Shown piece by piece: positions 28,141-56,049 of a stretch of DNA of 64,000 bases. Made by a program: the position numbers and the translations under genes. How positions within the stretch are numbered: the first letter of the stretch is position 1; each line of letters begins with the position of its first letter. The notes beneath the pieces were generated by a model. That model did no database searches, was not told where the DNA came from, and saw nothing but the letters and a program-made list of their open reading frames with translations. The stretch covers positions 62,001-126,000 of IMG/VR virus record IMGVR_UViG_3300026292_000003, one strand, 5' to 3'.

Positions 28141-28767
28141 ATGCAATTATCAAAGCACCACGTAGTAGTGGATGAGATCACATACGATCAAACCGCACTA
28201 CGACAATTATATCAAAAAATGGCTCATTGTGCATTAGAATGGAATGAGTATAAAACTGCAATTAAAGATCGTATAGGAGAAACACATATACACCAAGGAA
28301 GAACTGACGGATTTAAAGGTAGATTAATGGGTGTATATAGTCCTGCATACGAAGGTAAGCATATGGGCGAGTACGATGAAGTAAAAGATATAGTAAGTAA
28401 ATTTAATTTTTTAAAACCCTTAGGCAATGATGATATTACATTTATGTATTATGAGCCAGGGTTTGTTTTTAAACCACACACTGATAGACAAATGCATTAT
28501 AATATTATGTTACCTATATTACCAGACGATGGTTTCGAAAAGATTACGTTTTGGGAAGGTACAGATGCAGAAAGAGATAATCCAAGAGGTAAAGAATATA
28601 CATATGAGTACAGCCATACTCATCCTAGCATTTTTAATGGCAAAACCCTGCATAGTGTAGAAGAGATTAAAGAAGAACGAGTTATGTTTAGAATTAAAAT
28701 TACACATGAAACATTTGAAGAAATGATAGAAAGATATAAAGCAGGAAAATTTATTAATAATACTTGA
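28141..28767 (+). CDS. 2OG-Fe(II) oxygenase-like protein
   Basis: PHTD...IMLPI...LHSV...RVMFRI. Confidence 0.7.
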   Translation: MQLSKHHVVVDEITYDQTALRQLYQKMAHCALEWNEYKTAIKDRIGETHIHQGRTDGFKGRLMGVYSPAYEGKHMGEYDEVKDIVSKFNFLKPLGNDDITFMYYEPGFVFKPHTDRQMHYNIMLPILPDDGFEKITFWEGTDAERDNPRGKEYTYEYSHTHPSIFNGKTLHSVEEIKEERVMFRIKITHETFEEMIERYKAGKFINNT

Positions 28768-28792
28768 CAATCAGCATAAGATTTAATATAAT
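28764..28792 (+). promoter_or_regulatory. Consensus sigma70 promoter, leaderless geometry
   Basis: TTGACA-N17-TATAAT; ATG begins at the 7th nt after the -10 box. Confidence 0.85.
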
Positions 28793-28798
28793 AACATT

Positions 28799-29437
28799 AT
28801 GAAAAAAGTAATAGGTATATGTGGCCTCATCGGTCACGGAAAAGATACAGCCGCAGGATTTTTAATTGAAGAAGGATTTCAAAGAGTAAGTTTCGCTGGA
28901 ATACTAAAAGATGCCTGTGCAAATATATTTGGTTGGGATAGAATATTATTAGAAGGTAATACACCAGAAAGTAGAGCATTCAGAGAACAACCAGATGAAT
29001 GGTGGAGCAAACGTTTAGATATACCTGACTTTACACCACGTTATGCACTACAGTATGTAGGTACAGATGTTTTAAGAACACACTTTCATCCAGACATATG
29101 GGTTGCGGCTTGTGAAAGACAAGTACAACAATCTGAGAAAAATGTAGTTATTAGTGATTGTAGATTTTACAATGAATTAGAAGCTATACAAAATATGGGT
29201 GGTAAAACTGTAGTGGTATGGAGAAATGAAAAACCAGAATGGTGGCACTCTGCCTCAGAATTGAATCAAGCTAATTATAAAAAAACATCAAATATGATAG
29301 ATAGCATGAAATCAAATTATCCAGATGTACACAAAAGTGAATGGAGCTGGGCTGGTTGGGATTTTGACATACAACTAGACAATAATTCAACATTAGAATC
29401 ATTTAAAGCACAAACAATCAATAAAATCGTAGCATAA
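28799..29437 (+). CDS. Deoxynucleoside monophosphate kinase (T4 gp1-like)
   Basis: GICGLIGHGKDT, SFA..LK, TPRYALQYVGTD, ISDCRF.NE, HKSE. Confidence 0.92.
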   Translation: MKKVIGICGLIGHGKDTAAGFLIEEGFQRVSFAGILKDACANIFGWDRILLEGNTPESRAFREQPDEWWSKRLDIPDFTPRYALQYVGTDVLRTHFHPDIWVAACERQVQQSEKNVVISDCRFYNELEAIQNMGGKTVVVWRNEKPEWWHSASELNQANYKKTSNMIDSMKSNYPDVHKSEWSWAGWDFDIQLDNNSTLESFKAQTINKIVA

Positions 29438-29459
29438 ATATGTTATATGGAGGTAGCAT

Positions 29460-30914
29460 ATGTTCGAGCATGATTTCTGGCAACTAAAAAATCACAATAA
29501 AGAAATAACAGTTGGCTGGTTATATAATAATAATATTAAAGATGATTTTGCAAAAGGTTATACAAAAAATTTAACTGATTATTGGAGTGTAGAACTTGCT
29601 CATTTCTTTCCAACTCAATTTGCTGAAGAAACTGTAAATGATTTATTAAAAAAAGCATACGATAATGGGTTTTCAAGTATACTTGTTTTTAAGCAAGGTT
29701 GTACTTTACGTGGACCTAATTTTTTATCAATTTTTAGAAAGTTTCTTGATAAGCATACTGGTGTTAAGTTTATTGGCCATATATTAGATAGAGAAGAAGC
29801 TTACTACGAAATACATCCACAAACATTTTTTATAGATCTTAAATGGTGGGCAGAAGCAGGTTTTCCTGAATGGGGAGAAAGAGATGTGGATTTGCCACTT
29901 GAAACATTAGAGCCAGTACGTAGTGAAGAAAATCATCATGACCAATATACTCCATTATGGATTTGTCCGCCAATAACAAAAAATTTAAAAACATATCAAG
30001 GGCCATTAGGCGAAGGTTGGAATATGGTAAAGGCATTGATAGAATCTGGACAAAAGATAGTATCATGGAATAAAGATTGTAGAATATCAAAACAATATGC
30101 TTATGCAGAAGTTGAAGTAGATGCTCCTAGACACAGAGCAGATCTTTTAGAAGAAGTTAATCAAGACAAATCGTGTTTTGTTGCTAATACTGAAAATGTT
30201 CAAAATCTTGATGATTTTATTAAACAACGTATGCATCAAATGCCAGACTGGAATGGGCGTTTCCAACAAGTAGTAACTCCTGCATCTGGTATTAGTACAC
30301 TTGTATATGCGTTTAAACTAGGTTTAAAAGCAGGTGATAGGATTGTAATATACGATATATCTAAATTTGCTATTGAATATACAGATAAATTAATTAAAGA
30401 ATGGGATGCTAATACTAGTTATACGGAATTTGTATTAAATCAAAAAAAGAATAAACATGGCAACTATAAAGGTATACAACAATTAAGTCATACTGAAGAA
30501 TTAATAGATGAATTAAACAAAGAAGGCTTTTCTGAATGGGTTAATAACGATCTTAGAAAAATAAGTATTGCAACAATGGAAACTGATTTATACAATCAAC
30601 CAGAACATAAAAACTTTCTTAAACCTGTTGATCCTAAATTAATGACATATTTTCATTTTACTAATATATTTCATTATATGCCCTTATCGTTTTATTACAG
30701 TCTAAGGCAAAAATGGCAATTATCTAACGACTTAATTGGTAAAATACAAAATAAATACAGTAAGAACAATAATGCATTAATAAATTTATACAGAGGAACA
30801 TATTGTAATAGCAGAACATTCTCTTCAGCATTTTGGATAGATGATGCAGATACAAGAGAATTTTCTGAAATATCAGGAGATAATATATTTAGGTTATTAA
30901 AATGGAACAAATAG
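29460..30914 (+). CDS. Hypothetical protein; C-terminal half weakly SAM-methyltransferase-like
   Basis: Late promoter CATAAATA 29433; VVTPASG...IVIYDIS...TNIF pattern (weak). Confidence 0.5.
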   Translation: MFEHDFWQLKNHNKEITVGWLYNNNIKDDFAKGYTKNLTDYWSVELAHFFPTQFAEETVNDLLKKAYDNGFSSILVFKQGCTLRGPNFLSIFRKFLDKHTGVKFIGHILDREEAYYEIHPQTFFIDLKWWAEAGFPEWGERDVDLPLETLEPVRSEENHHDQYTPLWICPPITKNLKTYQGPLGEGWNMVKALIESGQKIVSWNKDCRISKQYAYAEVEVDAPRHRADLLEEVNQDKSCFVANTENVQNLDDFIKQRMHQMPDWNGRFQQVVTPASGISTLVYAFKLGLKAGDRIVIYDISKFAIEYTDKLIKEWDANTSYTEFVLNQKKNKHGNYKGIQQLSHTEELIDELNKEGFSEWVNNDLRKISIATMETDLYNQPEHKNFLKPVDPKLMTYFHFTNIFHYMPLSFYYSLRQKWQLSNDLIGKIQNKYSKNNNALINLYRGTYCNSRTFSSAFWIDDADTREFSEISGDNIFRLLKWNK

Positions 30915-31684
30915 AAAAAGATAAAGTGTATTTACGTAATTTAGAAAAAGTAAAAGAGTTTATTACTGGGTGTAAACAAAAAGAACATTATCAAGATTTA
31001 AAAATGCCTAGTGATGAGTTTACTAACTGGAAAACTGATGACCGTGCTAAAATGAAGTATGCAAAATGGGTTATACAAGAAAGTAATTGTCCTAGTTTAC
31101 TTTTAGATATGCCACTTCCTTATAAAGAAATGACAATAGAAGCAGAAAAGTTTCTTGATAGGTTTGTTAAACATAGAGGAGATATACATCCTGGTTGGAG
31201 TAGTATTGCAGTACACGGACAATCCGCAGAAAGAACACAACCTTCAAATTATTATGTAGAAAAAGGAATTGATACTCCAGATAATATACCTCCTTATACT
31301 TGGACAGAAATTGCAAAAGATTGTCCTGCTACAGTAGACTGGTTAAAAAGTTTTCCAATTAAAGAATTCCAAAGAGTAAGATATATGTTATTAGAACCGG
31401 GTGGTTTTATTCAACCACACCAAGACTTTGATAGAAGAAACATGGCCGCATTTAACGTATCTTTAAGTAATCCTCCTGGTGTAGAATTTGCACAAGAAGA
31501 TGCAGGTTTAATACCTTGGGAACCAGGCGAAGCACGTGCTATTGACATAGGCAGAAAGCATTGTGTATGGCACGGAGGAACAGAAAATAGAATTCATATG
31601 ATTATTCATGGTCAATGGGGCGAAGGCTTTGAAGAACTAATTTGTCGTAGTTTTGACCGCCTTTTAGACACAATTAAAACATAA
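30902..31684 (+). CDS. 2OG-Fe(II) oxygenase (Asp/Asn beta-hydroxylase-like)
   Basis: RVRYMLLEPGGFIQPHQD...KHCVWH...NRIHMIIHG. Confidence 0.85.
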   Translation: MEQIEKDKVYLRNLEKVKEFITGCKQKEHYQDLKMPSDEFTNWKTDDRAKMKYAKWVIQESNCPSLLLDMPLPYKEMTIEAEKFLDRFVKHRGDIHPGWSSIAVHGQSAERTQPSNYYVEKGIDTPDNIPPYTWTEIAKDCPATVDWLKSFPIKEFQRVRYMLLEPGGFIQPHQDFDRRNMAAFNVSLSNPPGVEFAQEDAGLIPWEPGEARAIDIGRKHCVWHGGTENRIHMIIHGQWGEGFEELICRSFDRLLDTIKT

Positions 31685-31786
31685 TATAACTCTGTAAACG
31701 GTGTTTTTACACGATTTTAAATAAATACTACATATAAGAGATTACTAAAAAATTAGAATAATCTAATATTTAAAAAGGAGCATATC

Positions 31787-34216
31787 ATGGCAAATCTTGT
31801 TTCACCTGGCGTACAGGTAACAGTAACAGACGAATCAGTATACGGCCCAGCAGGCGCTGGTACAGTTCCTATGTTATTCATTGCCACTGGTCAGGACAAG
31901 GTTGATCCAACCCTTACTGAGTCAGACGGCATAGCGAAATACACAAAGTCTGCTAATGCAAACAAACCAATATTAGTTACATCGCAGAGAGAGTTAACTC
32001 AATACTTTGGTAATGTTGACTTCCGTAAGGTAAGTGGAACAGTACAACAAGGTGATGAAACTAACGAATATGGTTTATTAGCGGCATACTCATTTTTAGG
32101 TCAAGCTTCAGCGGCATATATAACACGTGCAGATGTTGACTTAAATGCATTAAGACCGGTTTCATCAGAGCCAACTGGAGATCCAGCAAATTTAACATAC
32201 TGGATTAAACCTTCAACTTCATCTTTTGGTATTTGGAAGTATAGTACTGCAAATACTGAGTGGACTGAACAAACTCCAACAGTTGAAATTACATCAAGTG
32301 GTGCACCTACTGCGGCAGTAGTAGCAGGTGGATATCACGTTGTATTAGAAAATGGTTCAGCTGGAACAACAATAAAATATTTTGCGGCTAGTGGCGGCGC
32401 TTGGGTTGATAATTTTGGCCCAACAATGGCACCACACTATTCAGCACCAAGTTCACCATCAGATGGTGATGTTTGGATTAAAACTACAAAACCAGGTGGT
32501 GGATTGGACTTAGACGTTCAATTATTTACAACATCAGCAGGTAACTTTGTTAAACAAAGTGTAGTTTATGTACAAGACACAGCACCGGCAGGTACAACTT
32601 CAGATGTATTTGCAGACGGTACTTCAGCAACTGCAAGAACATTAACTGACGGAGATATCTGGATGGATATTTCTGCAACTGATGCATCATTAATCTTAAA
32701 CAGATATGATAGTATTGGAAATGGTTTTGATCAGGTTGCAACAGACTCATCAGTAGCAACTGGTGGTTATGTAATGGAAGTTAAAGCAACAGAACCAGTA
32801 GGCGCACCAGCAAATGGTACTATATGGTTTGACCCAGATGTAAATGAATTAGCAATTTACGAAGTAGTAAGCGATTCAGGAACACAAAAATGGCAAAGAG
32901 CATCAGACGTACAATACGTTACAACTGCACCAACAACAGATGGTTCAGGTGGTTCTTTATCAGCAGGTGACTATTGGGTAGATACAGATGCTTCAGGGTA
33001 TCCTGTAATTTACAGACACAATGGTACTGCTTGGGTAGCAAAAGATAAAGCAGATCAATCAACTGCGGCAGGATGTGTATTTGGAGATATTACTGCAAAC
33101 GATACATCAGCAGGCGCATTTGAAGCAACTCTATTAACAGGTGCACCAGATCCGTTAACACACCCAGTAGGTATTACTGGAATTAATATGTGTAGATCAG
33201 GTGGAACAGTTAGAAAATATAATTCAGCTCTAACTACAACTTGGAAATGGAGAGTTGAAGCAGGTAATCAAGCAGATGGCAGTGGTTCATTTGGTAGAAT
33301 TGCACAAAGAAAAGTAGTAGTAACAGCTATGCAGGCGGCGGCAGGCGTAAGTGATCTACAACAAGATACAATTCAATTCCGTTTACTTGCGGCACCAGGT
33401 TATCCTGAACTATATGATGAAATGGTTTCATTAAACAGTAATAGAGATGAAACTGCATTTATCATTGTTGACGCACCATTCCGTTTAAATCCAACAGAAG
33501 CAGTATCTTGGATTCAAGGAACAGGCGCAACTACAAATGGTGAAGGCGGCCTAGTAACAAAGAATACTTACTCAGCAGTTTATTATCCACACGCATACAC
33601 AACTAACCCTGTAACAGGCGATAACGTTGTAGCACCAGCATCACACATTGCATTATACACTTATGCGTATAGTGACAATGTATCATTTCAATGGTTTGCA
33701 CCAGCTGGTCTAACACGTGGTGTTGTACAAAATGCATCAAACGTTGGATACTTAAACAATGAAGATGAGTTTGTGTCATTAGCAGTAACTCAAGGTCAAA
33801 GAGACTCAATGTATGATAAAAAATTAAATCCAATAGCTAAATTTCCTGCAGAAGGTGTTGTAGTATTTGGACAAAAATCATTACACGCGAGTGCTTCAGC
33901 ATTAGACAGAGTTAATGTTGCTAGATTGACAGCTTACCTAAGAGAACGTTTTGCAGTTATTTCAAGACCGTTCTTATTTGAGCCAAATGATGCTAGTACT
34001 AGAGCAAATGCTAAACAAGTATTTGACGGTTTCCTAGCTAATATTTTACAACAACGTGGAATATATGACTTTGCAGTAGTTTGTGATACAACAAACAATA
34101 CACCGGCAAGAATAGATGCCAATGAATTTTACATTGACGTTGCTATTGAGCCAACTAAATCAGCAGAGTTTATTTACATTCCAATTAGAATTGTAAACAC
34201 TGGCGAATTAAGCTAA
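31787..34216 (+). CDS. Tail sheath protein (T4 gp18-like)
   Basis: LVSPGVQV, WFAPAGLTRG, GQKSL..SALDRVNVARL, FEPND, VCDTTNNTPARID, IEPTKSAEFIYIP. Confidence 0.97.
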   Translation: MANLVSPGVQVTVTDESVYGPAGAGTVPMLFIATGQDKVDPTLTESDGIAKYTKSANANKPILVTSQRELTQYFGNVDFRKVSGTVQQGDETNEYGLLAAYSFLGQASAAYITRADVDLNALRPVSSEPTGDPANLTYWIKPSTSSFGIWKYSTANTEWTEQTPTVEITSSGAPTAAVVAGGYHVVLENGSAGTTIKYFAASGGAWVDNFGPTMAPHYSAPSSPSDGDVWIKTTKPGGGLDLDVQLFTTSAGNFVKQSVVYVQDTAPAGTTSDVFADGTSATARTLTDGDIWMDISATDASLILNRYDSIGNGFDQVATDSSVATGGYVMEVKATEPVGAPANGTIWFDPDVNELAIYEVVSDSGTQKWQRASDVQYVTTAPTTDGSGGSLSAGDYWVDTDASGYPVIYRHNGTAWVAKDKADQSTAAGCVFGDITANDTSAGAFEATLLTGAPDPLTHPVGITGINMCRSGGTVRKYNSALTTTWKWRVEAGNQADGSGSFGRIAQRKVVVTAMQAAAGVSDLQQDTIQFRLLAAPGYPELYDEMVSLNSNRDETAFIIVDAPFRLNPTEAVSWIQGTGATTNGEGGLVTKNTYSAVYYPHAYTTNPVTGDNVVAPASHIALYTYAYSDNVSFQWFAPAGLTRGVVQNASNVGYLNNEDEFVSLAVTQGQRDSMYDKKLNPIAKFPAEGVVVFGQKSLHASASALDRVNVARLTAYLRERFAVISRPFLFEPNDASTRANAKQVFDGFLANILQQRGIYDFAVVCDTTNNTPARIDANEFYIDVAIEPTKSAEFIYIPIRIVNTGELS

Positions 34217-34236
34217 TAAGACACTACAAATAAATG

Positions 34237-34378
34237 AAAGGGCTACTATTTTTTAATAGTAGCCTTTTTCTATTTGTAACTATTCGATAAATACTATGCT
34301 ACTATATCGATATAGCAAATACTATCGTGTAAAGATTATGCGATTTTAAATCTTGAAATTTAAGGAGTACTCAAATGG
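34237..34378 (+). repeat. Cassette element copy 1: terminator + late promoter + structured leader + RBS
   Basis: GGGCTACTATT..AATAGTAGCCTTTTTC, TTCGATAAATACTA and TAAGGAGTACTCAAATGG are shared with 35007-35144. Confidence 0.85.
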
Positions 34379-34989
34379 ACGGAAAAAAAATGCACAAATT
34401 TGATTCTCATCATTTCTTTACTGCACTTGGCCATTGTATGCCACTAGACCACTGGTTATCGAAAGAAGCTGGTATGGAACTAGATGCACTTAACAATGAC
34501 GCAAACATGGTTGAGGAGAAAAGAGAAATGGGTAGTGACGATACAGGTAAAATGATGATTCACTATAAGTCAGCACCTACAAAATGGGACTTTGGAGATC
34601 TAAAAACTTCAGAAGCTGGTTACATTGAATATAACAGAGGTCACTTTATTTCACCTCACCGTGATAAGTTACGTAATGTTACTGAACCAAATCAATCAAT
34701 AAGATTAATGTGTTTCCTAAATCATACTCATCCTGAGGAAAATTGTTTTGTCTATGATGGACAAATAACACAATTTGAACCATGCAGATGGTATATGGTA
34801 AACACTCAACGTATGCACTATGGTTTTTCATTTGTTGACGGCGTTAAGCACTTAGGTATTACCCTAAAACTTACTGACGATGCATATGAAGCTACTACAA
34901 AATGGATACTAGATCATACTAATGGCGTACACTCAAAAGGTCATCACCAAACAGGTGAAGGCAGAATGTCAGTTTACAAACCATTCTAA
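34375..34989 (+). CDS. 2OG-Fe(II) oxygenase-like protein
   Basis: ISPHRD...IRLMCFLN...VNTQRMHYG. Confidence 0.7.
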   Translation: MDGKKMHKFDSHHFFTALGHCMPLDHWLSKEAGMELDALNNDANMVEEKREMGSDDTGKMMIHYKSAPTKWDFGDLKTSEAGYIEYNRGHFISPHRDKLRNVTEPNQSIRLMCFLNHTHPEENCFVYDGQITQFEPCRWYMVNTQRMHYGFSFVDGVKHLGITLKLTDDAYEATTKWILDHTNGVHSKGHHQTGEGRMSVYKPF

Positions 34990-35006
34990 TTAGAATATAA
35001 GGAATA

Positions 35007-35144
35007 TAGGGCTACTATTATTATTAATAGTAGCCTTTTTCTTTTCAGTGATTTCGATAAATACTAATGCAAATTGCAAACGCACTTGTAGTCTCAGATG
35101 AGATTGCAAATTTTTAAATTTAAAAATAAGGAGTACTCAAATGG
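35007..35144 (+). repeat. Cassette element copy 2
   Basis: Same terminator, promoter and RBS blocks as 34237-34378. Confidence 0.85.
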
Positions 35145-35458
35145 CAAACGATAATTTCAGGTTTAGAATAATCAAAGCTCCAGGCGGCGAATATTCTACA
35201 GTTGATGCATTTAAGGCTTCTCCAGCTTATGCAAGTATACAAACACTACTTGCTGGCAAGCCAGAGGCTTCTGGTACTATACACGTTTCATATAAATTAT
35301 ATGAAGGTGGCGTGTGGATCAGATATGACTTTGATAATGAAGAAGCTAGATTAGCATATAAACAATATGTTTTAGATGCTGGGTCAGATTTAGGTCAAAA
35401 ACCAAATGAAGTGGGTTTAGACAACGAAACCTTCCCAACATACGGATTCTTAGCATAG
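35141..35458 (+). CDS. Hypothetical late protein
   Basis: Own late promoter and TAAGGAG RBS. Confidence 0.65.
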   Translation: MANDNFRFRIIKAPGGEYSTVDAFKASPAYASIQTLLAGKPEASGTIHVSYKLYEGGVWIRYDFDNEEARLAYKQYVLDAGSDLGQKPNEVGLDNETFPTYGFLA

Positions 35459-35514
35459 CATTTTTCAACAATTTGGCAGGTTACAACTAGTAGCCTGTCA
35501 AATTACCAGTAAAA

Positions 35515-35544
35515 TGGGCTTCTTTTAAAGAAGCCTATCTTTTT
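35515..35544 (+). terminator. Terminator-like hairpin before the tail tube promoter
   Basis: GGCTTCTT-TTA-AAGAAGCC then T-rich run. Confidence 0.6.
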
Positions 35545-35610
35545 GAACACGGATTTGATAAATACAATATAAGATAAACAATACTACAGTAAGTATATAG
35601 GAGAAACAAA

Positions 35611-36219: not shown

Positions 36220-36234
36220 TAAGAGGATTCTTTA

Positions 36235-47834: not shown

Positions 47835-47861
47835 AGGGCCCGTTTTATAATGGGCCCTTTT
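47835..47861 (+). terminator. Rho-independent terminator
   Basis: AGGGCCCGTT-loop-AATGGGCCCT-TTT. Confidence 0.85.
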
Positions 47862-47868
47862 CTACGAT

Positions 47869-48009
47869 ATGAGAATAATTTGCTATAAATCATATAACGA
47901 TTATATTACACACGATTTTCCAAAAGAAGAATTAGAAGAAATACTGAAAATTTGCAAAGAATTAGAAATAAAATGGTATTGTATTGTGTATGATTCTCAC
48001 CCAGAATAA
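47869..48009 (+). CDS. Putative 46-aa protein (MRIICYKSYNDY...WYCIVYDSHPE)
   Basis: Open frame below the ORF-track cutoff that fills the gap; no clear RBS. Confidence 0.4.
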   Translation: MRIICYKSYNDYITHDFPKEELEEILKICKELEIKWYCIVYDSHPE

Positions 48010-48071
48010 AAAACCCTTATATTTCAAGGGTTTACACATCAAAAAAAATTAAAAAAAAGTGCATAAAAAGG

Positions 48072-48100
48072 TTGACCTTTTCACCAAGATGTCTTATTAT
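48072..48100 (+). promoter_or_regulatory. Sigma70-like early promoter related to the one at 25097
   Basis: TTGACC-N17-TATTAT; shared flanking blocks. Confidence 0.65.
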
Positions 48101-48143
48101 ATATGTATAGTTAGAAAATAAACAATTAAGAAAGAGGTCTCAA

Positions 48144-49007: not shown

Positions 49008-49025
49008 AACAGTTTTCTAACTATA

Positions 49026-49050
49026 GAAGAGGGGTGAAATTCCCCTCTTC
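49026..49050 (+). terminator. Terminator-like hairpin
   Basis: GAAGAGGGG-loop-CCCCTCTTC. Confidence 0.65.
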
Positions 49051-49073
49051 GACTTTCATAAAGGAATTGGATA

Positions 49074-49511
49074 TTGGATGTATTTGCAGACCTTTTTAAA
49101 ATTACAAATAATGCAGAAGTTACAAAAAAAGTTTGTACAAAGTGTAATAAAAATTTACCAATAACAAATTTTAGTAAAAGCTCTGGAGCAAATTTTCTAA
49201 GACCAGAGTGTAGAGCTTGTAATAATAAATTATCTAAAATAAGAAAACAATTAAATCAAACATATGGTAAACCACCGCAAGGCTATACTTGTCCTATATG
49301 TCAACGAGAAGCAAAAGAAGTAATAAACAAAGGTGGTAAGTCAGGTGCTTGGGTTGTAGATCATTGTCATACTACTGATAAATTTAGAGGTTGGTTATGT
49401 CATTCATGTAACCGACTCCTTGGTATATGCAATGATGATATTTCTAATTTGAAAAGAGCAATTAAATATTTAAAAAAATCGCAACTTTCATTGACAATTC
49501 AAGATAAGTAA
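49074..49511 (+). CDS. Endonuclease VII-family nuclease with N-terminal Zn finger
   Basis: CTKC..CRAC; CPIC...VDHCH....RGWLCHSCN.LLG. Confidence 0.88.
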   Translation: MDVFADLFKITNNAEVTKKVCTKCNKNLPITNFSKSSGANFLRPECRACNNKLSKIRKQLNQTYGKPPQGYTCPICQREAKEVINKGGKSGAWVVDHCHTTDKFRGWLCHSCNRLLGICNDDISNLKRAIKYLKKSQLSLTIQDK

Positions 49512-49519
49512 TGTAATAT
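49491..49519 (+). promoter_or_regulatory. Sigma70-like promoter for uvsW, leaderless geometry
   Basis: TTGACA-N17-TAATAT; ATG begins at the 7th nt after the -10 box. Confidence 0.75.
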
Positions 49520-49525
49520 ATAGTT

Positions 49526-50977
49526 ATGAAATGTAAGATAACTCTGAAAGATGAAGTGAATTGCAAAGTAGAAGGCTTAGATATAGACACACGTAGAAAG
49601 TGTGAAAAAGAATTAAAGTTTTTTCTTCCTTATGCATATCACGTACCAGCATTTAAGCTAGGTAGATGGGATGGATGTACGTCTTATTTCACTATAGGTG
49701 GAATTACGTATACTAACCTATTAGATAAAGTATTGCCTATTATTATGGGCCAGGGTTATGAGATAGATCTAAATGATTTACGTTTTAAATATGACTTTCA
49801 ATTTGATCCTGTAGACGAAACTTCATATCAACATAAAGTATGGCCAAAAGGTCACGTTGTAGAAGGCGAACCCGTAACCTTAAGAGATTATCAAGTAGAA
49901 ATTATTAACAAATATCTAGCAACACCACATTGTTTACAAGAAATTGCAACAGGTGCAGGTAAAACTCTTATAACTGCGGCATTAAGCAACAAAGTAGAAA
50001 AGTATGGAAGGAGCATTGTTATTGTACCTAATAAAGATTTAGTTACACAGACATATGCTGATTATGCAAACCTCGGACTAGACGTTGGCGTATATTACGG
50101 CGACAAGAAAGAATTAGGACACACCCACACTATTTGTACTTGGCAGAGTTTAAACAGTATAAGAAAACGATTTAAAGAAGGTGAAAGTGATTTAAGTTTA
50201 GTAGATTTTGCAGATGGTGTAGTTTGTGTAATAGTTGACGAAGTACACCAAGCAAAGGCAGAAGTATTAAAAGAATTATTAACAAAAGATTTTTCAAACA
50301 TTCCATTAAGATGGGGACTAACAGGTACTATACCAAAAGCTGATCATGAGAAGGTTAGTTTACAGGCTTGTTTAGGAGAAGTAACACACAAACTGGCGGC
50401 TAGTGAATTACAAGAAAAAGATGTTCTTAGTCAATGCCACGTTAACGTTGTGCAATTAAAAGAGGTAGCAGAGTATAATAACTATCAGAGTGAATTAACT
50501 TATTTAACTACTAATGCTTCACGTATGAAGTATATAAGTGGGTTAATTAAAAAAGTATCAGCATCTGGTAATACTCTTGTGCTAGTAGATAGAATTAAAG
50601 CTGGGCAATTAATATGCGACAATATAGCTGAAGCTAACTTTGTTAGTGGAGAGATGAAAACTACTACACGTAAAGATCATTATGATGACATTAATGAAGG
50701 AACTAATCAAATTGTTGTAGCAACATATGGTGTTGCGGCAGTAGGTATTAATATTCCACGTATATTTAATCTTGTTTTAATAGAACCAGGAAAGAGCTTT
50801 GTTAGAGTTATACAAAGTATTGGACGTGGTATTAGAAAAGCAGAAGATAAAGATAATGTGCAGATATGGGATATTACAAGTTCAGCTAAATTTAGTAAAA
50901 GACATCTTACAGAACGTAAGAAATTTTACAAAGAAGCAAATTATCCATTTACTATTGAAAAAGTAAATTGGCTTTAA
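49526..50977 (+). CDS. uvsW: SF2 helicase UvsW
   Basis: WDG, LRDYQ, ATGAGKT, VDEVH, GLTGT, QSIGRGIR. Confidence 0.93.
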   Translation: MKCKITLKDEVNCKVEGLDIDTRRKCEKELKFFLPYAYHVPAFKLGRWDGCTSYFTIGGITYTNLLDKVLPIIMGQGYEIDLNDLRFKYDFQFDPVDETSYQHKVWPKGHVVEGEPVTLRDYQVEIINKYLATPHCLQEIATGAGKTLITAALSNKVEKYGRSIVIVPNKDLVTQTYADYANLGLDVGVYYGDKKELGHTHTICTWQSLNSIRKRFKEGESDLSLVDFADGVVCVIVDEVHQAKAEVLKELLTKDFSNIPLRWGLTGTIPKADHEKVSLQACLGEVTHKLAASELQEKDVLSQCHVNVVQLKEVAEYNNYQSELTYLTTNASRMKYISGLIKKVSASGNTLVLVDRIKAGQLICDNIAEANFVSGEMKTTTRKDHYDDINEGTNQIVVATYGVAAVGINIPRIFNLVLIEPGKSFVRVIQSIGRGIRKAEDKDNVQIWDITSSAKFSKRHLTERKKFYKEANYPFTIEKVNWL

Positions 50978-50986
50978 GGAATAAAA

Positions 50987-51487
50987 ATGAAAATATTAAC
51001 AGTAGACAACAAGACGTATGAACTAGATGACATACCAGATACAATAGAAGACTTAAGATACAGTATTTTAGATTATAGTAATCCTAGTCATATAGATTAT
51101 TATTTTATACCACTAGTATTTTTAGAAAGTTTTTATGCACCTGCCGCAGTATTAAAAATTGGTGAACATAGTATTACAATGCCACTTGATTGGAGTGTAG
51201 TAATTTGTGACCCGGCTGTAGGAGATCCAGAAGTAGTAAGTTTAATGAGTTTAAATGATAGAGGATTTAGTGTATTTGCATTTAATCCTATTACAGGATA
51301 TACACCAAAGTTTATGGATATTCAAATTACCAACATTTATACTGATGTAAAATGGTATGCACCTAAATTAAAATTTGGACATTTATTAAATGTTCCATTA
51401 AACGATAAAGATAATGCACCTTGTGTATTGTTTGTTAAAGAAGCTAACAAACTTCCTGAGGTACTTGACATAAGTGAACTTTGGTAG
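50987..51487 (+). CDS. Hypothetical protein
   Basis: AAGGA RBS; follows uvsW. Confidence 0.65.
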   Translation: MKILTVDNKTYELDDIPDTIEDLRYSILDYSNPSHIDYYFIPLVFLESFYAPAAVLKIGEHSITMPLDWSVVICDPAVGDPEVVSLMSLNDRGFSVFAFNPITGYTPKFMDIQITNIYTDVKWYAPKLKFGHLLNVPLNDKDNAPCVLFVKEANKLPEVLDISELW

Positions 51488-51491
51488 TATT

Positions 51492-51683
51492 ATGAAGAAA
51501 CAAGAAGAAGATCCATTTAAACCAAAAGATACTTGCAGTATATGTAGTAGTGAATATGACGAAGATGCAGGTGGAGTACAAGGCTACTTTGGTATATTAC
51601 CAGTTACATTTTGTGAATGGTGTTACAGTAGTATATACGATATGGTATCACAAGATATAAAGGCTAATGATATAGATGAGTAA
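51492..51683 (+). CDS. Small Zn-ribbon protein
   Basis: CSIC...CEWC. Confidence 0.55.
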   Translation: MKKQEEDPFKPKDTCSICSSEYDEDAGGVQGYFGILPVTFCEWCYSSIYDMVSQDIKANDIDE

Positions 51684-52131
51684 GTTAGATATTAAAAGCG
51701 AAATGAGAGCTATTGATACTAAAGATAGGAAATGGTATAATAGTCTTACTGATGAAGAAAAAAGTAAATTAAGTCTTTGGCCATTAATGAGATATACAAG
51801 TAGTGCAGGTGATAGAAACTTTACAGAGCATTATTTAGAATGGACTAACGAAGTAGTTAATGTTCATTTTAACAAGTTAAGAAATCATCCAGAGCTACAG
51901 TTTAAGCTATTACAATTAGTAGGGCTTGGAAAGCCTACATATCACCCTTGGATAGCACCAGGTAAACGAGGCAAGAAAAACAAAGTACAAGAATGGGTAG
52001 TTAAAAACTACAGTCATTTAAATGATGACGAAGTTGATATTTTTATAAGCACAAAAACTAAAGAAGATTTTATTGAACTATTTGAGGAATACGGAATGAC
52101 TAAAAAAGAAATAAAAGATTTATTAAAATGA
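51676..52131 (+). CDS. Possible clamp-loader small subunit (gp62-like)
   Basis: MRY.S...NE.VN...HPELQF.LL...HPWI pattern loosely resembles gp62; replication context. Confidence 0.45.
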   Translation: MSKLDIKSEMRAIDTKDRKWYNSLTDEEKSKLSLWPLMRYTSSAGDRNFTEHYLEWTNEVVNVHFNKLRNHPELQFKLLQLVGLGKPTYHPWIAPGKRGKKNKVQEWVVKNYSHLNDDEVDIFISTKTKEDFIELFEEYGMTKKEIKDLLK

Positions 52132-52454
52132 AGTATAATATAATGGACATTGGCGGAGAAGTTATTAAAGATAATGAAACTTATACATTAAAAGATAACA
52201 AGGCATTAAAAAATTTAGTATTAAGCAGTACACAATTACACCCATATCAAACAACACGTGGGCATAACCATAGTGGGCAAGAAGAAGTATATTACTTTGT
52301 TAAAGGGTCAGGTACTATGTGGCTAGATGAAAAAGAAATGTTTGTAAAAGAAGGTGATGTTGTATTAATAGAAGATGGAGTATTTCATAAAGTTAAATGT
52401 GGACCACATGGTTTATACTTTGTATGTGTCTTTGATGGGAAGAGAAATCATTAA
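52128..52454 (+). CDS. Cupin-domain protein
   Basis: GHNH..QEEVYYFVKGSG; GDVVLI.DGVFH. Confidence 0.88.
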   Translation: MKYNIMDIGGEVIKDNETYTLKDNKALKNLVLSSTQLHPYQTTRGHNHSGQEEVYYFVKGSGTMWLDEKEMFVKEGDVVLIEDGVFHKVKCGPHGLYFVCVFDGKRNH

Positions 52455-53125
52455 TGTTTAAGTGTAACTATTGTAAAAAGTCATTTGCAAAAGAAAGTAC
52501 ACTAGCAGTACATATGTGTGAGCAAAAACGTAGGTTCTTGCAAAAAGATGAGAAGCACGTGCAATTAGGATTTAGAGCTTATCAATTATTTTATAGGATA
52601 GGTACTAATTCTAAAAATGAAAAGACATATGATGAATTTGCAACAAGTCCTTATTATATTGCGTTTGTAAAATTTGGATATTATTGTAGAGATATTGGAG
52701 TAGATGATGTACCAGCATTTACAGAATGGTTAGTTAGAAATCAAGTGAGACTAGATCATTGGAGTAGAGATGCACAATTTAAAAAGTGGATGAAAGAACG
52801 TTTAAAAACTGAAAGTGTTGACAGAGGTGTAGAACGTACTATATTATTTTTACAAGAATGGGCAAAAGAAAACAGTACAACATACAACAAATACTTTACT
52901 GAAGTATCTACAAATTTAGCAGTATTTCATATTTGTAGTGGAAAAATATCTCCTTGGGTATTATTTCATAGCAATGAAGCACAAACTATGATAGATAATT
53001 TTAATACAGAACAGTTAAAAATGGTTAATGAATTTTTAGAAATAGATTACTGGCAAAGAGCCATGAGTGTAAACCCACAAGATAGTAGATGGGTTACAGA
53101 AATATTACAAAAGGCAGAACTTTGA
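52454..53125 (+). CDS. Hypothetical protein with N-terminal zinc finger
   Basis: FKCNYCKKSF.....L..H.C; GKISPW. Confidence 0.7.
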   Translation: MFKCNYCKKSFAKESTLAVHMCEQKRRFLQKDEKHVQLGFRAYQLFYRIGTNSKNEKTYDEFATSPYYIAFVKFGYYCRDIGVDDVPAFTEWLVRNQVRLDHWSRDAQFKKWMKERLKTESVDRGVERTILFLQEWAKENSTTYNKYFTEVSTNLAVFHICSGKISPWVLFHSNEAQTMIDNFNTEQLKMVNEFLEIDYWQRAMSVNPQDSRWVTEILQKAEL

Positions 53126-53214
53126 TAACAGCCATACTTTTTACGTTATGTTGTTTTATAATTCCTGTTTTATTGTTATATAAAATGAATAAAGAGGACC
53201 CAAATGATCGTTAA
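53122..53214 (+). CDS. Putative 30-aa single-TM peptide
   Basis: TTGA overlap with upstream stop; (M)ITAILFTLCCFIIPVLLLYKMNKEDPNDR. Confidence 0.4.
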   Translation: MITAILFTLCCFIIPVLLLYKMNKEDPNDR

Positions 53215-53788
53215 TACAGATATTGATATTGATGTAGCAGATAGAGATAAACTTTTAAAATTAATTAAAGGTACTACTGCTATGATATTAAGAGATAATA
53301 AGCAAACAAAACATAATACAGGTGTGTACTTTCACGAGATGCCTAGCAATCCATTTACAGGATTATCTAGTGTAGACTACAAAGAAGCAGAAGATATGGG
53401 CTACTTTAAAATTGATGTATTAAACGTGGGTTTATATAAAGATATAAAATCAAAAGAACATTTACATGAGTTATTAGCAATGGAACCAATGTGGGAATTG
53501 TTAGAACATAAAGAGGTAGTAGAAAAATGTTTTCATATACACAAACACTTTGATATAGTCAAAACTTTAAAACCAAAAAGTGTAGAACAGTTAGCGGCAG
53601 TATTAGCAATAATAAGACCTGCAAAACGTCATTTGTTAAAGCAAAATTGGAATGAGATAAATGCGAATGTGTGGAAGAGGCCAAAGGGTGATGAATACTT
53701 TTTTAAAAAAGCTCATGCTCATGCATATGCATTAGCTATTGTTCTGCAATTAAATATGATGGCTACGGGCCTTTCTTTACAAGATTAA
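53204..53788 (+). CDS. Minimal DNA polymerase III alpha (family C)-like protein
   Basis: DIDID, HNTGV, GYFKIDVL, KPKS.EQLAAVLAIIRP and YFFKKAHAHAYA match DnaE motifs (PDxDxD, HAxG, GLxKxDxLG, LxRPG, YxFNKSHxxxY) in order. Confidence 0.8.
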   Translation: MIVNTDIDIDVADRDKLLKLIKGTTAMILRDNKQTKHNTGVYFHEMPSNPFTGLSSVDYKEAEDMGYFKIDVLNVGLYKDIKSKEHLHELLAMEPMWELLEHKEVVEKCFHIHKHFDIVKTLKPKSVEQLAAVLAIIRPAKRHLLKQNWNEINANVWKRPKGDEYFFKKAHAHAYALAIVLQLNMMATGLSLQD

Positions 53789-54134
53789 TACTTCTACGTT
53801 TAATTCTTTTTGTAATACTATTACTTAATCTAACTTCTGGCCCTGCTATTACTTCCATTTGTTTTACATTAAAACTTTGAACACAATGACCAAAGTTCCA
53901 TCTATTAAGTAATGCTATGTTTATTGGAAGTTTCCGGTTAGTTTCCCACCACCATTCTTCGCCCAATTCTAAAAATTTCATTTTTTCATTCTCATCCCAT
54001 AAGCGATCGTAGATGTACATACTAGCTACGTGGCTATCGATGTTCTGCATAATACCCAAATACTCGTTGCCTGCGTATTCAATAACGGTTAGAAATGGAT
54101 ATTGCTCTAAGAGTTTCTGGTGTTTGGTTTGCAT
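53763..54134 (-). CDS. Hypothetical protein
   Basis: 123-aa ORF (YPFL...EYLGI.QN...WWWETNR.LPIN); minus-strand CTAAATA upstream. Confidence 0.65.
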   Translation of the reverse strand: MQTKHQKLLEQYPFLTVIEYAGNEYLGIMQNIDSHVASMYIYDRLWDENEKMKFLELGEEWWWETNRKLPINIALLNRWNFGHCVQSFNVKQMEVIAGPEVRLSNSITKRIKRRSINLVKKGP

Positions 54135-54195
54135 TCTATAGGTATTTAGCCTTTTGAAATCTCCACTTTGGATAAATACTACATAGGAGTAATAT

Positions 54196-55029
54196 ATGTC
54201 AAATTATGGAACTACATATCAAGTTAATCAACAAGGCGATCTTTATACATTAGAAGATCACGGAACACCAGCAGGACAAGCAAAATACGCAGGTGCAAAA
54301 GGTACCGCAGTTAATAGTCCTATGAACTATAGGTTCTTAAAACTGTTTCGTGGGTTTGATAATGAGTTTTTCTTCTTTGTAAAGAATCAAGATAGAAAAC
54401 CAATAATGTTACAAGGTACTACAGTATATTGTTCTTTTATTGATAGAGATGATAGAGCAACCACAGTAAGTAAAAAAGCAATAATTACAGATTATGTACA
54501 AGGTGGGATTAAAGTAGTAGTAACAGTTGGTGAAAGTGGAAGATTTAGACAAGGTCATTATGATTTAGTGTTTAGTTATACTACTGACACAGGTTTAACA
54601 GTTCCATTATATTGTGATCTAAATATGAGACCTAACTTTACTGTTGATGTAAGTGAAGAAGGTGACGCATTACCACTTACTACACAAATTGATAGTAACT
54701 TCCAACAACAAACAACCAATAATACAACATATTATTATAGTAGCCAATTAAAAGCAACAGGATACTATGACAAACCAAATGGGTTAGTAACAATAGGAGT
54801 ATATGGTACAGGTTACACTGGTAACTTTTATATTCAAGGCGCATTAAGTGATAACCCTACAGAAGGAGATTGGTTTGATATTACTCTTGGTACTCATACA
54901 GTAACATATTTTCCATACCAAAACCTTACCGGTATAGATCCTTGGACTTTTAGAACAAACGTTAAATATCTAAGAGCAAAATTCACACAACCTGCAGGAA
55001 CACTTGACAAAGTCGTAATTAGAGTGTAA
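54196..55029 (+). CDS. Late structural protein (BppU/baseplate-like beta domains)
   Basis: Late promoter GATAAATAC 54171, AGGAG RBS; FF.VKNQDRKP, G.Y.L.F pattern. Confidence 0.55.
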   Translation: MSNYGTTYQVNQQGDLYTLEDHGTPAGQAKYAGAKGTAVNSPMNYRFLKLFRGFDNEFFFFVKNQDRKPIMLQGTTVYCSFIDRDDRATTVSKKAIITDYVQGGIKVVVTVGESGRFRQGHYDLVFSYTTDTGLTVPLYCDLNMRPNFTVDVSEEGDALPLTTQIDSNFQQQTTNNTTYYYSSQLKATGYYDKPNGLVTIGVYGTGYTGNFYIQGALSDNPTEGDWFDITLGTHTVTYFPYQNLTGIDPWTFRTNVKYLRAKFTQPAGTLDKVVIRV

Positions 55030-55032
55030 TAT
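55004..55032 (+). promoter_or_regulatory. Sigma70-like promoter for primase, leaderless geometry
   Basis: TTGACA-N17-TAATAT; ATG begins at the 7th nt after the -10 box. Confidence 0.75.
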
Positions 55033-55038
55033 ACACGT

Positions 55039-56049
55039 ATGACTCTGATGAATGACTACGTACGAACTCTGATACCTACTAACTGGCGAAGTAATCCAAA
55101 TGGGTGGGTTTCTGGTAATTGCCCTATGTGTGTACGAAACGGTGAAAGTAGACCAGATACAAAAGGAAGAGGCGGGTTTTATTTTGAAGAAGATCATTTT
55201 CAATATAATTGTTTTAATTGTAGTTACAAAACAGGTTGGACAATAAACAACAGAATAACAAACAAGCTAAAAAAATTGTTAATAGTATTAGGTGCTGATG
55301 AGAATGACATACACCGTATACAGTTAGAATTATTAAGAGAACAAGACGTTGCTACATTATTAATTAAAAAAGAAAAGCCAAAGAAGTTAAATATTGGTTG
55401 GGATAAAAAAGCATTACCAGAAGGTGCAAAGCCTTTTATGGAATTTAAAGATCCTGATCAAAATTGGATTGATGCAGTAGCATATTTAACTGGCAGAGGC
55501 TTTGATGTAACAGATGCTAGACTTATGTATAGTCCTAGTAAGCAGTTTGGTAGAATGAATAGAAGATTTATTATACCATTTACATATAAAAATGAAATAG
55601 TAGGTTATACTGCTAGATGGATTGGAACTCCACCTAAAGAAGTAGCAAAATATTATAATCAACAACCTAAAGCAGATTTTGTTTATGGACTTGATAGGCA
55701 AACAAATAATAGAGAAATGGTTATAGTTACAGAAGGTCAACTTGATGCTATAGTAACAGATGGTTGTGCTACAGGTAGAAATAATATAAATGATGAACAA
55801 GCAGAAATATTGAAAAGTTTAGAAAAAGAAATTATAGTTTTACCAGATCAAGACGAAGCTGGTAAAATGATGTGTAAGTCTGCTATAAGACATGGTTTCA
55901 GTGTATCCTTTCCAGAGTGGAAAGATTGTAAAGATGCAAGTGATGCCTTGACAAAATACGGAAGATTGTATACAATAAGAAGTATTATAAATAGTAGAGA
56001 AAAAAATCCAACAAAAATTGAACTATTAATGAGGAAGGTTTGCAAATGA
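55039..56049 (+). CDS. DnaG-type DNA primase (gp61-like)
   Basis: CPMC...RGG...CFNC Zn domain, IIPF, GYTAR, TOPRIM VTEGQLDA, PDQDEAG, KDASD. Confidence 0.93.
   Translation: MTLMNDYVRTLIPTNWRSNPNGWVSGNCPMCVRNGESRPDTKGRGGFYFEEDHFQYNCFNCSYKTGWTINNRITNKLKKLLIVLGADENDIHRIQLELLREQDVATLLIKKEKPKKLNIGWDKKALPEGAKPFMEFKDPDQNWIDAVAYLTGRGFDVTDARLMYSPSKQFGRMNRRFIIPFTYKNEIVGYTARWIGTPPKEVAKYYNQQPKADFVYGLDRQTNNREMVIVTEGQLDAIVTDGCATGRNNINDEQAEILKSLEKEIIVLPDQDEAGKMMCKSAIRHGFSVSFPEWKDCKDASDALTKYGRLYTIRSIINSREKNPTKIELLMRKVCK

What the first reader, a model, noticed from the sequence alone, without database searches (positions are those of the whole stretch)
28764..55041. Three DNA-metabolism genes share exact leaderless-mRNA geometry
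Seen: dNMP kinase (28799), uvsW (49526) and primase (55039) each have TTGACA-N17-TA(T/A)(A/T)AT with the ATG at the 7th nt after the -10 box and no Shine-Dalgarno. Each -35 box sits in the tail of the upstream gene. The late gene at 12413 has the same spacing after ATAAATA. Inference: leaderless translation is used for low-dosage replication enzymes, possibly to escape a translational shut-off, and implies a host that handles leaderless mRNA well.
Basis: partly seen in the sequence, partly recalled or inferred. Interest (0 to 1): 0.6.

Follow-up and report, generated by a model that had tools for sequence, protein, structure and literature searches.

The report
Conserved leaderless replication genes, marine jumbo phage
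In an uncultured marine jumbo phage, several DNA-replication genes sit exactly one transcription-start distance behind a textbook host-type promoter and lack a ribosome-binding site, and hundreds of related phages keep this layout, so the messages very probably begin at the AUG itself (leaderless mRNAs), although no transcript start has been mapped.

Summary
dNMP kinase (ATG 28799), a UvsW-like helicase (49526) and the primase (55039) each carry TTGACA-N17-TA(T/A)(A/T)AT-N6-ATG. The strict pattern occurs 3 times in the window against 0.04 expected. None has a Shine-Dalgarno (pairing energy about 0, against a genome median of -6.1 kcal/mol). A fourth exact case, a PD-(D/E)XK exonuclease, lies just past the window.

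Conservation is the decisive evidence. In 146 distinct upstream sequences from IMG/VR relatives of these four genes, 130 keep a 5-7 nt gap (115 exactly 6). The spacer and the gap sequence vary freely. Of 16 variants without the geometry, 13 carry an SD. The base before the ATG is a pyrimidine in 92%, which fits the polymerase start-site rule. Pseudomonas phage PA5oct, the nearest cultured relative, keeps the layout at its primase and exonuclease.

The late-gene example at 12413 is not conserved. The set is not limited to DNA metabolism, because a glucosaminidase and, in this lineage, a radical-SAM gene also fit. Dosage, escape from shut-off and host inferences remain untested, and no transcription start could be mapped.

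The phage also encodes IF3 and ribosomal protein bS21, which suggests a testable link to initiation control.

This is a new variant of a known mechanism, of moderate to high interest.

The parts
28764..28792 (+). Sigma-70-type promoter of the dNMP kinase gene: TTGACA (28764-69), 17-nt spacer, TATAAT (28787-92). The -35 box overlaps the TGA stop of the upstream ORF.
   Evidence: 12 of 12 consensus match. Kept in 26 of 38 distinct relatives with a 6-7 nt gap.
28799..29437 (+). dNMP kinase CDS (212 aa). The ATG is the 7th nt after the -10 box and there is no SD.
   Evidence: SD dG +0.4; PF21448; phrog_139, E 3.5e-44.
49491..49519 (+). Promoter of the UvsW-like helicase: TTGACA, 17 nt, TAATAT. It lies in the last codons of the endonuclease VII gene and the 14-nt gap after it.
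   Evidence: 36 of 38 distinct relatives have a 6-7 nt gap.
49526..50977 (+). SF2 (UvsW-like) DNA helicase CDS (483 aa), predicted to be leaderless.
   Evidence: (SD dG -0.1). The N-terminus aligns with the PA5oct homologue.
55004..55032 (+). Promoter of the primase: TTGACA, 17 nt, TAATAT. The -10 box overlaps the TAA stop of the upstream structural-protein-like gene.
   Evidence: 22 of 23 distinct relatives have a gap of 6, down to 44% aa identity. PA5oct has TTGACA-N17-TATAAT-N6-GTG.
55039..56049 (+). Toprim DNA primase CDS (336 aa), predicted to be leaderless. The second in-frame ATG at 55048 has no SD and is lost in more distant relatives.
28141..28767 (+). Upstream same-strand ORF whose end carries the -35 box. 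No + strand terminator-like site lies between it and the kinase gene.
49074..49511 (+). Endonuclease VII gene whose 3' end carries the helicase promoter's -35 box.
54196..55029 (+). Virion-structural-protein-like gene, preceded by the late-type ATAAATA motif at 54172, whose 3' end carries the primase promoter. The same synteny occurs in PA5oct.
12400..12415 (+). ATAAATA, 6 nt, ATG of a 134-aa gene (phrog_20984). The geometry is present here but is not conserved.
55948..55976 (+). Comparator: a leadered promoter of the same class (TTGACA-N17-TACAAT) ahead of the DnaB-like helicase. That gene has a long leader with a GAGGAAGG SD and ATG at 56046.

Best explanation
These are leaderless early genes. 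Host RNA polymerase with its primary sigma factor recognises a near-consensus -35/-10 promoter. It starts transcription on the A of the ATG, which is the 7th base after the -10 hexamer. The message therefore begins with AUG and carries no Shine-Dalgarno. Ribosomes, presumably 70S with fMet-tRNA as for lambda cI, initiate on the 5'-terminal AUG.

The genes lie on the same strand as, and directly behind, other genes. Some of those have late-type ATAAATA promoters, and no terminator intervenes. An internal, SD-less copy of the start codon on a read-through transcript should be translated poorly. The likely consequence, which is inferred and not shown, is that protein output is tied to the activity of this one promoter. 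That gives modest, promoter-gated (early) expression of replication and recombination enzymes.

Shown here: the geometry, its excess over chance, its conservation, the covariation with SD, and the pyrimidine at -1.

Inferred: the transcription start, 70S-type initiation, and the gating and dosage role.
For: - Exact geometry at three window genes, with 3 matches against 0.04 expected. A fourth exact case is the exonuclease at L001:558-595.
- The same promoter class occurs 40 times on the coding strand and 9 times on the other strand. It normally has leaders of about 20-60 nt with AGGAG, so it is a real promoter class.
- Across IMG/VR relatives, counting distinct upstream sequences: helicase 34 of 38 have a gap of 6 and 2 have 7; primase 22 of 23 have 6; kinase 24 of 38 have 6 and 2 have 7; exonuclease 35 of 47 have 6, 10 have 5 and 1 has 7. 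The spacer and the 6-nt gap sequence differ freely.
- Covariation with SD: 130 sequences with the geometry have mean SD energy -0.84 kcal/mol (6% at or below -4). The 16 without it average -5.26 (81% at or below -4). Mann-Whitney p = 6e-8.
- The -1 base is C or T in 106 of 115 gap-6 sequences, against 80 of 197 for SD-led genes (Fisher p = 4e-21). This matches the Y(-1)R(+1) start-site preference.
- The start codon was ATG in every relative resolved (282 of 286 loci; the script looked only for ATG), while about 10% of genes in this genome use GTG or TTG.
- PA5oct (TerL 54% identical) keeps the layout at its primase (GTG) and exonuclease.
- A distant complete relative has the layout at its DnaB-like helicase.
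- Literature: a -10 motif abutting the ORF is the validated signature of leaderless genes (PMC12340547). Leaderless initiation prefers a 5' AUG (PMC9031893).
Against: - No transcription start was mapped. The only RNA data were assembled metatranscriptome contigs, which cannot show 5' ends. Some of them bridge the promoter and the ATG (X6 49401-51097 and 54106-55339; X3 54817-55166). Read-through RNA, or DNA carried into the libraries, therefore exists.
- The related sequences are not phylogenetically independent, so the p-values overstate the evidence.
- The first 40 nt of the kinase message is predicted to be fairly structured (-8.8 kcal/mol).
- The PA5oct primase would start with GUG, which is a poor leaderless start in E. 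coli.
- The functional reading (gating, low dosage) has no direct support.
Confidence: 0.8

Rival explanations
1. The promoters are real, but most protein comes from polycistronic read-through transcripts. Termination-reinitiation or 70S scanning after the upstream stop, which lies only 9-31 nt before the ATG, would drive translation. The exact spacing would then be incidental to translation.
For: - The upstream stops lie 31, 14 and 9 nt before the ATGs.
- There are no + strand terminator-like sites upstream.
- Metatranscriptome contigs bridge the junctions.
Against: - Coupling does not explain why the -10 to ATG distance is held at 5-7 nt in 130 of 146 distinct sequences, or why -1 is a pyrimidine.
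- Upstream context differs widely among kinase and exonuclease relatives while the promoter-ATG unit is kept.
- Scanning ribosomes are reported to need a canonical binding site to reinitiate (PMC9031893).
Confidence: 0.1
2. Transcription starts a few bases away from the A, giving leaders of 1-3 nt or starts inside the codon. These would then be near-leaderless rather than strictly leaderless messages, possibly with a different efficiency for each gene.
For: - Gaps of 5, 7 and 8 nt occur naturally: exonuclease 10 of 47 with a gap of 5, glucosaminidase with a conserved gap of 8, PA5oct exonuclease with 7.
- Start-site choice normally varies by about 1 nt.
Against: - The sharp mode at exactly 6 (115 of 130).
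- The Y(-1)A(+1) pattern favours the A of the ATG.
Confidence: 0.07
3. The match is chance, or the conserved block is another kind of DNA or RNA element (a regulator-binding or replication-related site) that only resembles a promoter.
For: The genome is AT-rich (33.6% GC), so TAnnnT is common.
Against: - 3 matches observed against 0.04 expected.
- The reversed control pattern hits 0-1 times per relative, against 2-4 real hits, always on the coding strand.
- The same hexamers and 17-nt spacing serve about 40 ordinary leadered genes and tRNA clusters in the genome.
Confidence: 0.03

Closest known systems
Lambda cI transcribed from pRM, and other classic phage or transposon leaderless mRNAs
   Same: - A sigma-70 promoter places the transcription start on the A of the AUG.
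- There is no SD.
- Translation starts on a 5'-terminal AUG by 70S-type initiation (PMC10491246, PMC9031893).
- The same gene can also be present on another transcript in a non-leaderless context. For lambda pRE this is from my own knowledge.
   Different: - The present case is in a lytic jumbo phage, not a temperate-phage repressor.
- It concerns a set of at least four replication or recombination genes rather than one regulator.
- The layout is conserved across hundreds of environmental genomes.
- No transcript or protein data exist for it.
Genome-wide '-10 motif adjacent to the ORF' leaderless genes of Deinococcus-Thermus (also common in Actinobacteria and Archaea)
   Same: TAnnnT lies at a fixed short distance from the start codon with no SD. 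That spacing was shown to be required for expression (PMC12340547).
   Different: There it is the dominant expression mode of the organism. In this phage it is a small minority (about 4-7 of roughly 270 genes) against a background of strong AGGAG SDs, and each case has a full consensus -35 box.
PA5oct early promoters (Arenbergviridae, Wroclawvirus)
   Same: - The same promoter motifs (TTGAC / TATAATA), identified around RNA-seq transcript starts (PMC7318152).
- The same synteny: structural gene, primase, helicase.
- Leaderless-type spacing at the primase and exonuclease.
   Different: - That paper never uses the word 'leaderless'.
- The PA5oct helicase has an SD leader.
- The PA5oct primase start would be GTG.
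- PA5oct lacks the IF3 gene found in the marine clade.
Jumbo phages with mapped transcript starts (phiKZ, AR9)
   Same: Large lytic phages whose 5' UTRs have been surveyed.
   Different: phiKZ showed no leaderless transcripts (PMC8244752). AR9 UTRs are 26-491 nt (PMC5312081). Both use their own polymerases, whereas this phage uses host-type promoters.

Membership tests
Leaderless mRNA genes | Transcription start at, or within a few nt of, the start codon | not testable with these tools
   The start is predicted only from promoter geometry: the ATG is the 7th nt after the -10 box, and -1 is a pyrimidine in 92% of relatives. Metatranscriptome contigs cannot show 5' ends.
Leaderless mRNA genes | No Shine-Dalgarno upstream of the start codon | tested here: met
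   Anti-SD pairing energy is +0.4 (kinase) and -0.1 (helicase), against a genome median of -6.1 kcal/mol. No value was printed for the primase start, which has no SD by eye. The mean is -0.84 over 130 related sequences.
Leaderless mRNA genes | AUG as the 5'-terminal start codon | tested here: met
   ATG at all four genes and in every relative resolved (282 of 286 loci; the script looked only for ATG). The exception is the PA5oct primase, which has GTG.
Leaderless mRNA genes | Protein made from the 5'-terminal AUG | not testable with these tools
   Indirect support only. The N-termini are conserved from this ATG, an in-frame stop lies 4-5 codons upstream, and the kinase P-loop starts at residue 6.
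Sigma-70-type (primary sigma) promoters | -35 TTGACA, 17 +/- 1 bp spacer, -10 TAnnnT | tested here: met
   10 to 12 of 12 consensus positions match at the three sites. There are 7 matches in the window against 0.67 expected.
Sigma-70-type (primary sigma) promoters | Placement upstream of genes on the coding strand, with conservation in relatives | tested here: met
   40 occurrences on the + strand against 9 on the - strand, mostly 20-60 nt ahead of SD-led starts or tRNAs. The boxes are conserved while the spacers vary.
Sigma-70-type (primary sigma) promoters | Initiation by host holoenzyme at these sites | not testable with these tools
   By analogy only: PA5oct depends on the host polymerase, and such motifs lie around its transcript starts (PMC7318152).
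   Only 8 of 66 distinct relatives have any TAAATA within 40 nt, at gaps of 2-28 nt, and none has a gap of 6. ATAAATA normally has 17-30 nt leaders with an SD.

The most novel reading that the evidence does not exclude
The leaderless genes and the phage's own initiation machinery form one circuit. This phage and its marine relatives encode IF3 and ribosomal protein bS21, next to ClpX and ClpS. Excess IF3 is known to repress leaderless translation, and bS21 is reported to mediate SD pairing between mRNA and 16S rRNA. As these phage proteins accumulate, they would selectively switch off, or retune, the leaderless replication genes relative to the SD-led genes. That would be a virus-encoded timer acting at the level of initiation mode. 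It would be layered on promoter-gated translation that keeps these genes silent on late read-through transcripts.
Probability: 0.2. Interest if true: 0.8.

Novelty: new variant of a known kind. Interest (0 to 1): 0.6.

Why it matters
Leaderless mRNAs in phages are known mainly from single genes such as lambda cI. In my literature searches, the two jumbo phages with surveyed 5' UTRs (phiKZ and AR9) showed none.

This case is a small, evolutionarily stable set of replication and recombination genes in a globally distributed marine jumbo-phage clade. It extends in part to the cultivable Pseudomonas phage PA5oct. Natural switches between the leaderless state and the SD-led state occur in some lineages.

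Three things follow.
- It offers a clean natural system for asking what leaderless initiation is for in an organism that otherwise uses strong SDs: dosage, timing, or insulation from read-through.
- It gives gene-callers a concrete rule for placing starts. The annotated PA5oct primase start lies 6 nt upstream of the in-frame GTG that fits the geometry, so it may be two codons too long.
- Together with the phage-encoded IF3 and bS21, it makes viral control of initiation mode directly testable with reporter fusions.

Tried and rejected
- DNA-level search of cultured phages found nothing. The closest cultured relatives are PA5oct-like phages, at 39-54% protein identity.
- Transcript-start evidence was sought in public RNA runs. 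Only Logan contigs of marine metatranscriptomes hold parts of the region (shares of 0.13 or less). Laying four of them on 49400-55390 (5,991 letters, within the operators' limit) showed presence and some contigs bridging the starts, but no 5'-end information.
- The PA5oct promoter table (Supplementary Table S3) is not held.
- A RegA-type translational repressor (PF01818) was not found, but the control genomes were also silent, so this is uninformative.
- No Sigma70_r4 domain was found in the 60%-complete record.
- I looked for a phage initiator tRNA that might boost leaderless initiation. The single tRNA-Met(CAT) is not initiator-like.
- I tried to find the host through the tmRNA tag peptide. 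The only exact hits were Clostridia with ordinary tmRNAs, so there is no host clue.
- Predicted 5' structure of the first 40 nt shows no common trend.
- The ATAAATA-N6-ATG idea for gene 12413 was rejected for lack of conservation.
- The search for homologous proteins, structure prediction and complex prediction were not needed.
Full report
**What the window is.** The 64-kb window is bases 62,001-126,000 of a 221,643-bp linear IMG/VR virus record with 33.6% GC. CheckV estimates it is about 60% complete. Nearly all genes are on the + strand. No cultured phage matches at the DNA level. By protein, the nearest cultured relatives are PA5oct-like Pseudomonas jumbo phages: primase 39% and large terminase 54% identical. 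Relatives are abundant in IMG/VR, and parts of the region occur in marine metatranscriptomes. One distant relative is a complete 342.6-kb genome with terminal repeats.

**Check of the observation.** Every coordinate in the finding is right.
- dNMP kinase: TTGACA 28764-69, N17, TATAAT 28787-92, N6, ATG 28799.
- Helicase: TTGACA 49491-96, N17, TAATAT 49514-19, N6, ATG 49526.
- Primase: TTGACA 55004-09, N17, TAATAT 55027-32, N6, ATG 55039.

The strict pattern occurs 3 times in the window, against 0.04 in shuffles. The looser promoter pattern occurs 7 times against 0.67 expected, all on the + strand. The gene names hold: PF21448/phrog_139 dNMP kinase, a ResIII plus Helicase_C SF2 helicase, and a Toprim primase.

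Each ATG is the only usable start. An in-frame stop lies 4-5 codons upstream, and the kinase P-loop begins at residue 6. The helicase N-terminus aligns with its PA5oct homologue. The alternative primase ATG at 55048 has no SD and disappears in more distant relatives. The -35 boxes do lie in the tails of the upstream ORFs, and two of the upstream stop codons overlap a promoter box.

**Context in the whole genome.** TTGACA-N16-18-TAnnnT occurs 40 times on the + strand and 9 times on the - strand. It typically lies 20-60 nt ahead of a start with an AGGAG-type SD, or ahead of tRNA genes. This is therefore the phage's ordinary host-type promoter. The median anti-SD pairing energy of heuristically called starts is -6.1 kcal/mol. 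The candidate genes score about 0.

A gene-start-centred search found a fourth exact case about 560 nt beyond the window end: TTGACA-N17-TAAACT-atgagt-ATG in front of a PD-(D/E)XK exonuclease (phrog_298, E 6e-57; L001:558-1270). It also found looser cases:
- a radical-SAM gene (TTGACT, gap 5);
- a glucosaminidase or endolysin-like gene (gap 8);
- an unknown 170-aa gene on the - strand (gap 9).

**Conservation, the decisive test.** I fetched relatives of the four genes from IMG/VR, located each N-terminus by tblastn, and collapsed identical upstream sequences. The table counts distinct upstream sequences.

| Gene | Distinct sequences | Gap 6 | Gap 5 | Gap 7 | Other |
|---|---|---|---|---|---|
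| Helicase | 38 | 34 | 0 | 2 | 2 with a 23-26 nt leader carrying AAAGGA |
| Primase | 23 | 22 | 0 | 0 | 1 without a promoter |
| dNMP kinase | 38 | 24 | 0 | 2 | 2 with a 23-nt leader and ACGGAG; 9 with no nearby promoter but a GAGG SD; 1 unclear |
| Exonuclease | 47 | 35 | 10 | 1 | 1 with a 39-nt leader |

The primase result holds down to 44% protein identity. The 17-nt spacer, the 6-nt gap and the flanks vary freely, while the two hexamers and the position of the ATG stay fixed.

Three further results support a start at the ATG.
- SD strength covaries with geometry. The 130 sequences with the geometry average -0.84 kcal/mol and the 16 without it average -5.26 (Mann-Whitney p = 6e-8).
- The base before the ATG is C or T in 106 of 115 gap-6 sequences. 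For SD-led genes it is C or T in 80 of 197 (Fisher p = 4e-21). It alternates between T and C, as expected if the A is the initiating purine.
- Whole-record pattern searches in five relatives gave 2-4 hits each, always on the coding strand. A reversed control pattern gave 0-1.

The sequences are related to one another, so these p-values are descriptive rather than exact.

**Reach of the feature.** In PA5oct the synteny of structural gene, primase and helicase is kept. The primase has TTGACA-N17-TATAAT-gtgcgc-GTG. The annotated start is the GTG directly after the -10 box, but an in-frame GTG lies 6 nt further on. The PA5oct exonuclease has TTGACA-N17-TATAAT-N7-ATG. Its helicase has an AGGA leader, and its kinase context is unclear.

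The PA5oct paper reports 32 TTGAC/TATAATA promoters around RNA-seq transcript starts and dependence on the host polymerase. It never uses the word 'leaderless'.

In the complete 342.6-kb relative the kinase is SD-led, but the DnaB-like helicase has the strict geometry. The radical-SAM gene is leaderless-type only in this genome and its 98% kin. Relatives at 78-84% identity mostly have a 17-21 nt leader with AAGAG(G/A). The glucosaminidase keeps an 8-nt gap and no SD down to 56% identity. So the two states interconvert in evolution, and the set is enriched for DNA-metabolism genes but not restricted to them.

**The late-gene example.** ATAAATA is the most enriched non-SD upstream word: 64 occurrences on the + strand, 37 of them within 60 nt of a start. 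It usually has 17-30 nt leaders with an SD, and it sits ahead of the tail sheath, terminase and other structural genes. ATAAATA-N6-ATG at 12413 is real, but 66 distinct relatives of that gene show no such spacing. I treat it as unsupported.

**How it most likely works.** Host holoenzyme initiates on the A of the ATG. The message starts with AUG and is translated by the leaderless route. This matches lambda cI from pRM and the '-10 adjacent to ORF' genes of Deinococcus (PMC10491246, PMC12340547, PMC9031893).

The genes follow other same-strand genes, some with late-type promoters, and no terminator-like site intervenes. Read-through transcripts should therefore carry the ATG internally without an SD. 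I infer that protein output is tied to this promoter alone, giving modest early expression that is insulated from late read-through.

**Direct RNA evidence.** None could be obtained. Only assembled contigs of marine metatranscriptomes hold parts of the region. They show that the phage group is present, and some contigs bridge the promoter-ATG junctions. They cannot show 5' ends, strand or expression level.

**Side findings that bear on mechanism and host.**
- The record encodes 12 tRNAs and a permuted tmRNA that matches the Alphaproteobacteria model (RF01849, 97 bits). This is a lead to an alphaproteobacterial host. A tag-peptide scan gave no host.
- The record also encodes a cluster of a ClpX-like C-terminus, IF3 (PF05198 plus PF00707), bS21 (PF01165) and ClpS.
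- IF3 is present in three of four marine relatives tested, including the complete one, and is absent from PA5oct.
- Excess IF3 represses leaderless translation in E. coli (PMC9031893), and bS21 mediates SD pairing (PMC6375957). A phage-run switch between initiation modes is therefore a testable and more novel reading. I give it about 0.2.
- Phage-encoded bS21 is documented (PMC6375957, PMC9723584). That huge phages can encode initiation factors is from my own recollection of the literature and was not checked here.

**Verdict.**
- The leaderless reading is well supported by comparative evidence (confidence about 0.8), but no transcript start has been mapped.
- The mechanism is a known one. A conserved, multi-gene use of it in a lytic jumbo-phage clade that also carries its own IF3 and bS21 is a new variant. 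I rate the interest at about 0.6.

Noticed in passing
G000:C1:162260-162602 (L390:460-802, +), outside the window: The phage encodes a permuted two-piece tmRNA. It matches Rfam alpha_tmRNA (RF01849, 97 bits, E 2.5e-26) and tmRNA_permuted (RF04321). The tag peptide is AEDNFAIAA, and the gene has its own TTGACA promoter. This suggests an alphaproteobacterial host. A tag-based scan of prokaryote genomes hit only Clostridia and gave no host.
   Followed up: partly
G000:C1:154616-155824 (L438:832-2039, +), outside the window: Gene cluster of a ClpX-like C-terminus, translation initiation factor IF3 (IF3_N plus IF3_C), ribosomal protein bS21, and ClpS. IF3 is also present in marine relatives G001, G004 and the complete G005, and is absent from PA5oct. 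It may be linked to control of leaderless versus SD-led initiation.
   Followed up: partly
L371:1400-1437 (PA5oct MK797984, about 145,855-145,892): The annotated PA5oct primase start (GTG directly after the -10 box) may be two codons too far upstream. An in-frame GTG lies exactly 6 nt after TATAAT, in the same geometry as in the marine clade.
   Followed up: partly
L382:1501-1538 (G005 = IMGVR_UViG_3300020469_003050, 254,266-254,303): In the complete 342.6-kb relative the DnaB-like replicative helicase has the strict leaderless geometry. In the window's phage the same gene (ATG 56046) has a long leader with a GAGGAAGG SD.
   Followed up: partly
L002:560-596 (G000:C1:192560-192596), with relatives L392-L408: The radical-SAM/SPASM gene has TTGACT-N17-TATAAT-N5-ATG and no SD, only in this genome and its 98% kin. 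Relatives at 78-84% identity mostly have 17-21 nt leaders with AAGAG(G/A). This is a natural switch between the leaderless and SD-led states.
   Followed up: yes
Window 27035, 29434, 31721, 40189, 41782, 54172 and others; genome-wide: ATAAATA (often followed by C) is a strongly enriched upstream motif: 64 on the + strand, 37 within 60 nt of starts. It sits ahead of the tail sheath, terminase and other structural genes, so it is likely the late promoter. A few other ATAAATA sites lie 5-6 nt from an ATG (genome 57234, 176652 and 161100 on the - strand). These were not tested for conservation.
   Followed up: partly
G000:C1:220738-220701 (- strand; L004:692-1201): An unknown 170-aa gene has TTGACA-N16-TATAAT-N9-ATG and a weak SD. 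It has no Pfam or PHROG match.
   Followed up: no
Window 55948-56046: The DnaB-like helicase gene has both an early-type promoter (TTGACA-N17-TACAAT) and an ATAAATA motif 10 nt downstream of it. This suggests dual early and late transcription.
   Followed up: no
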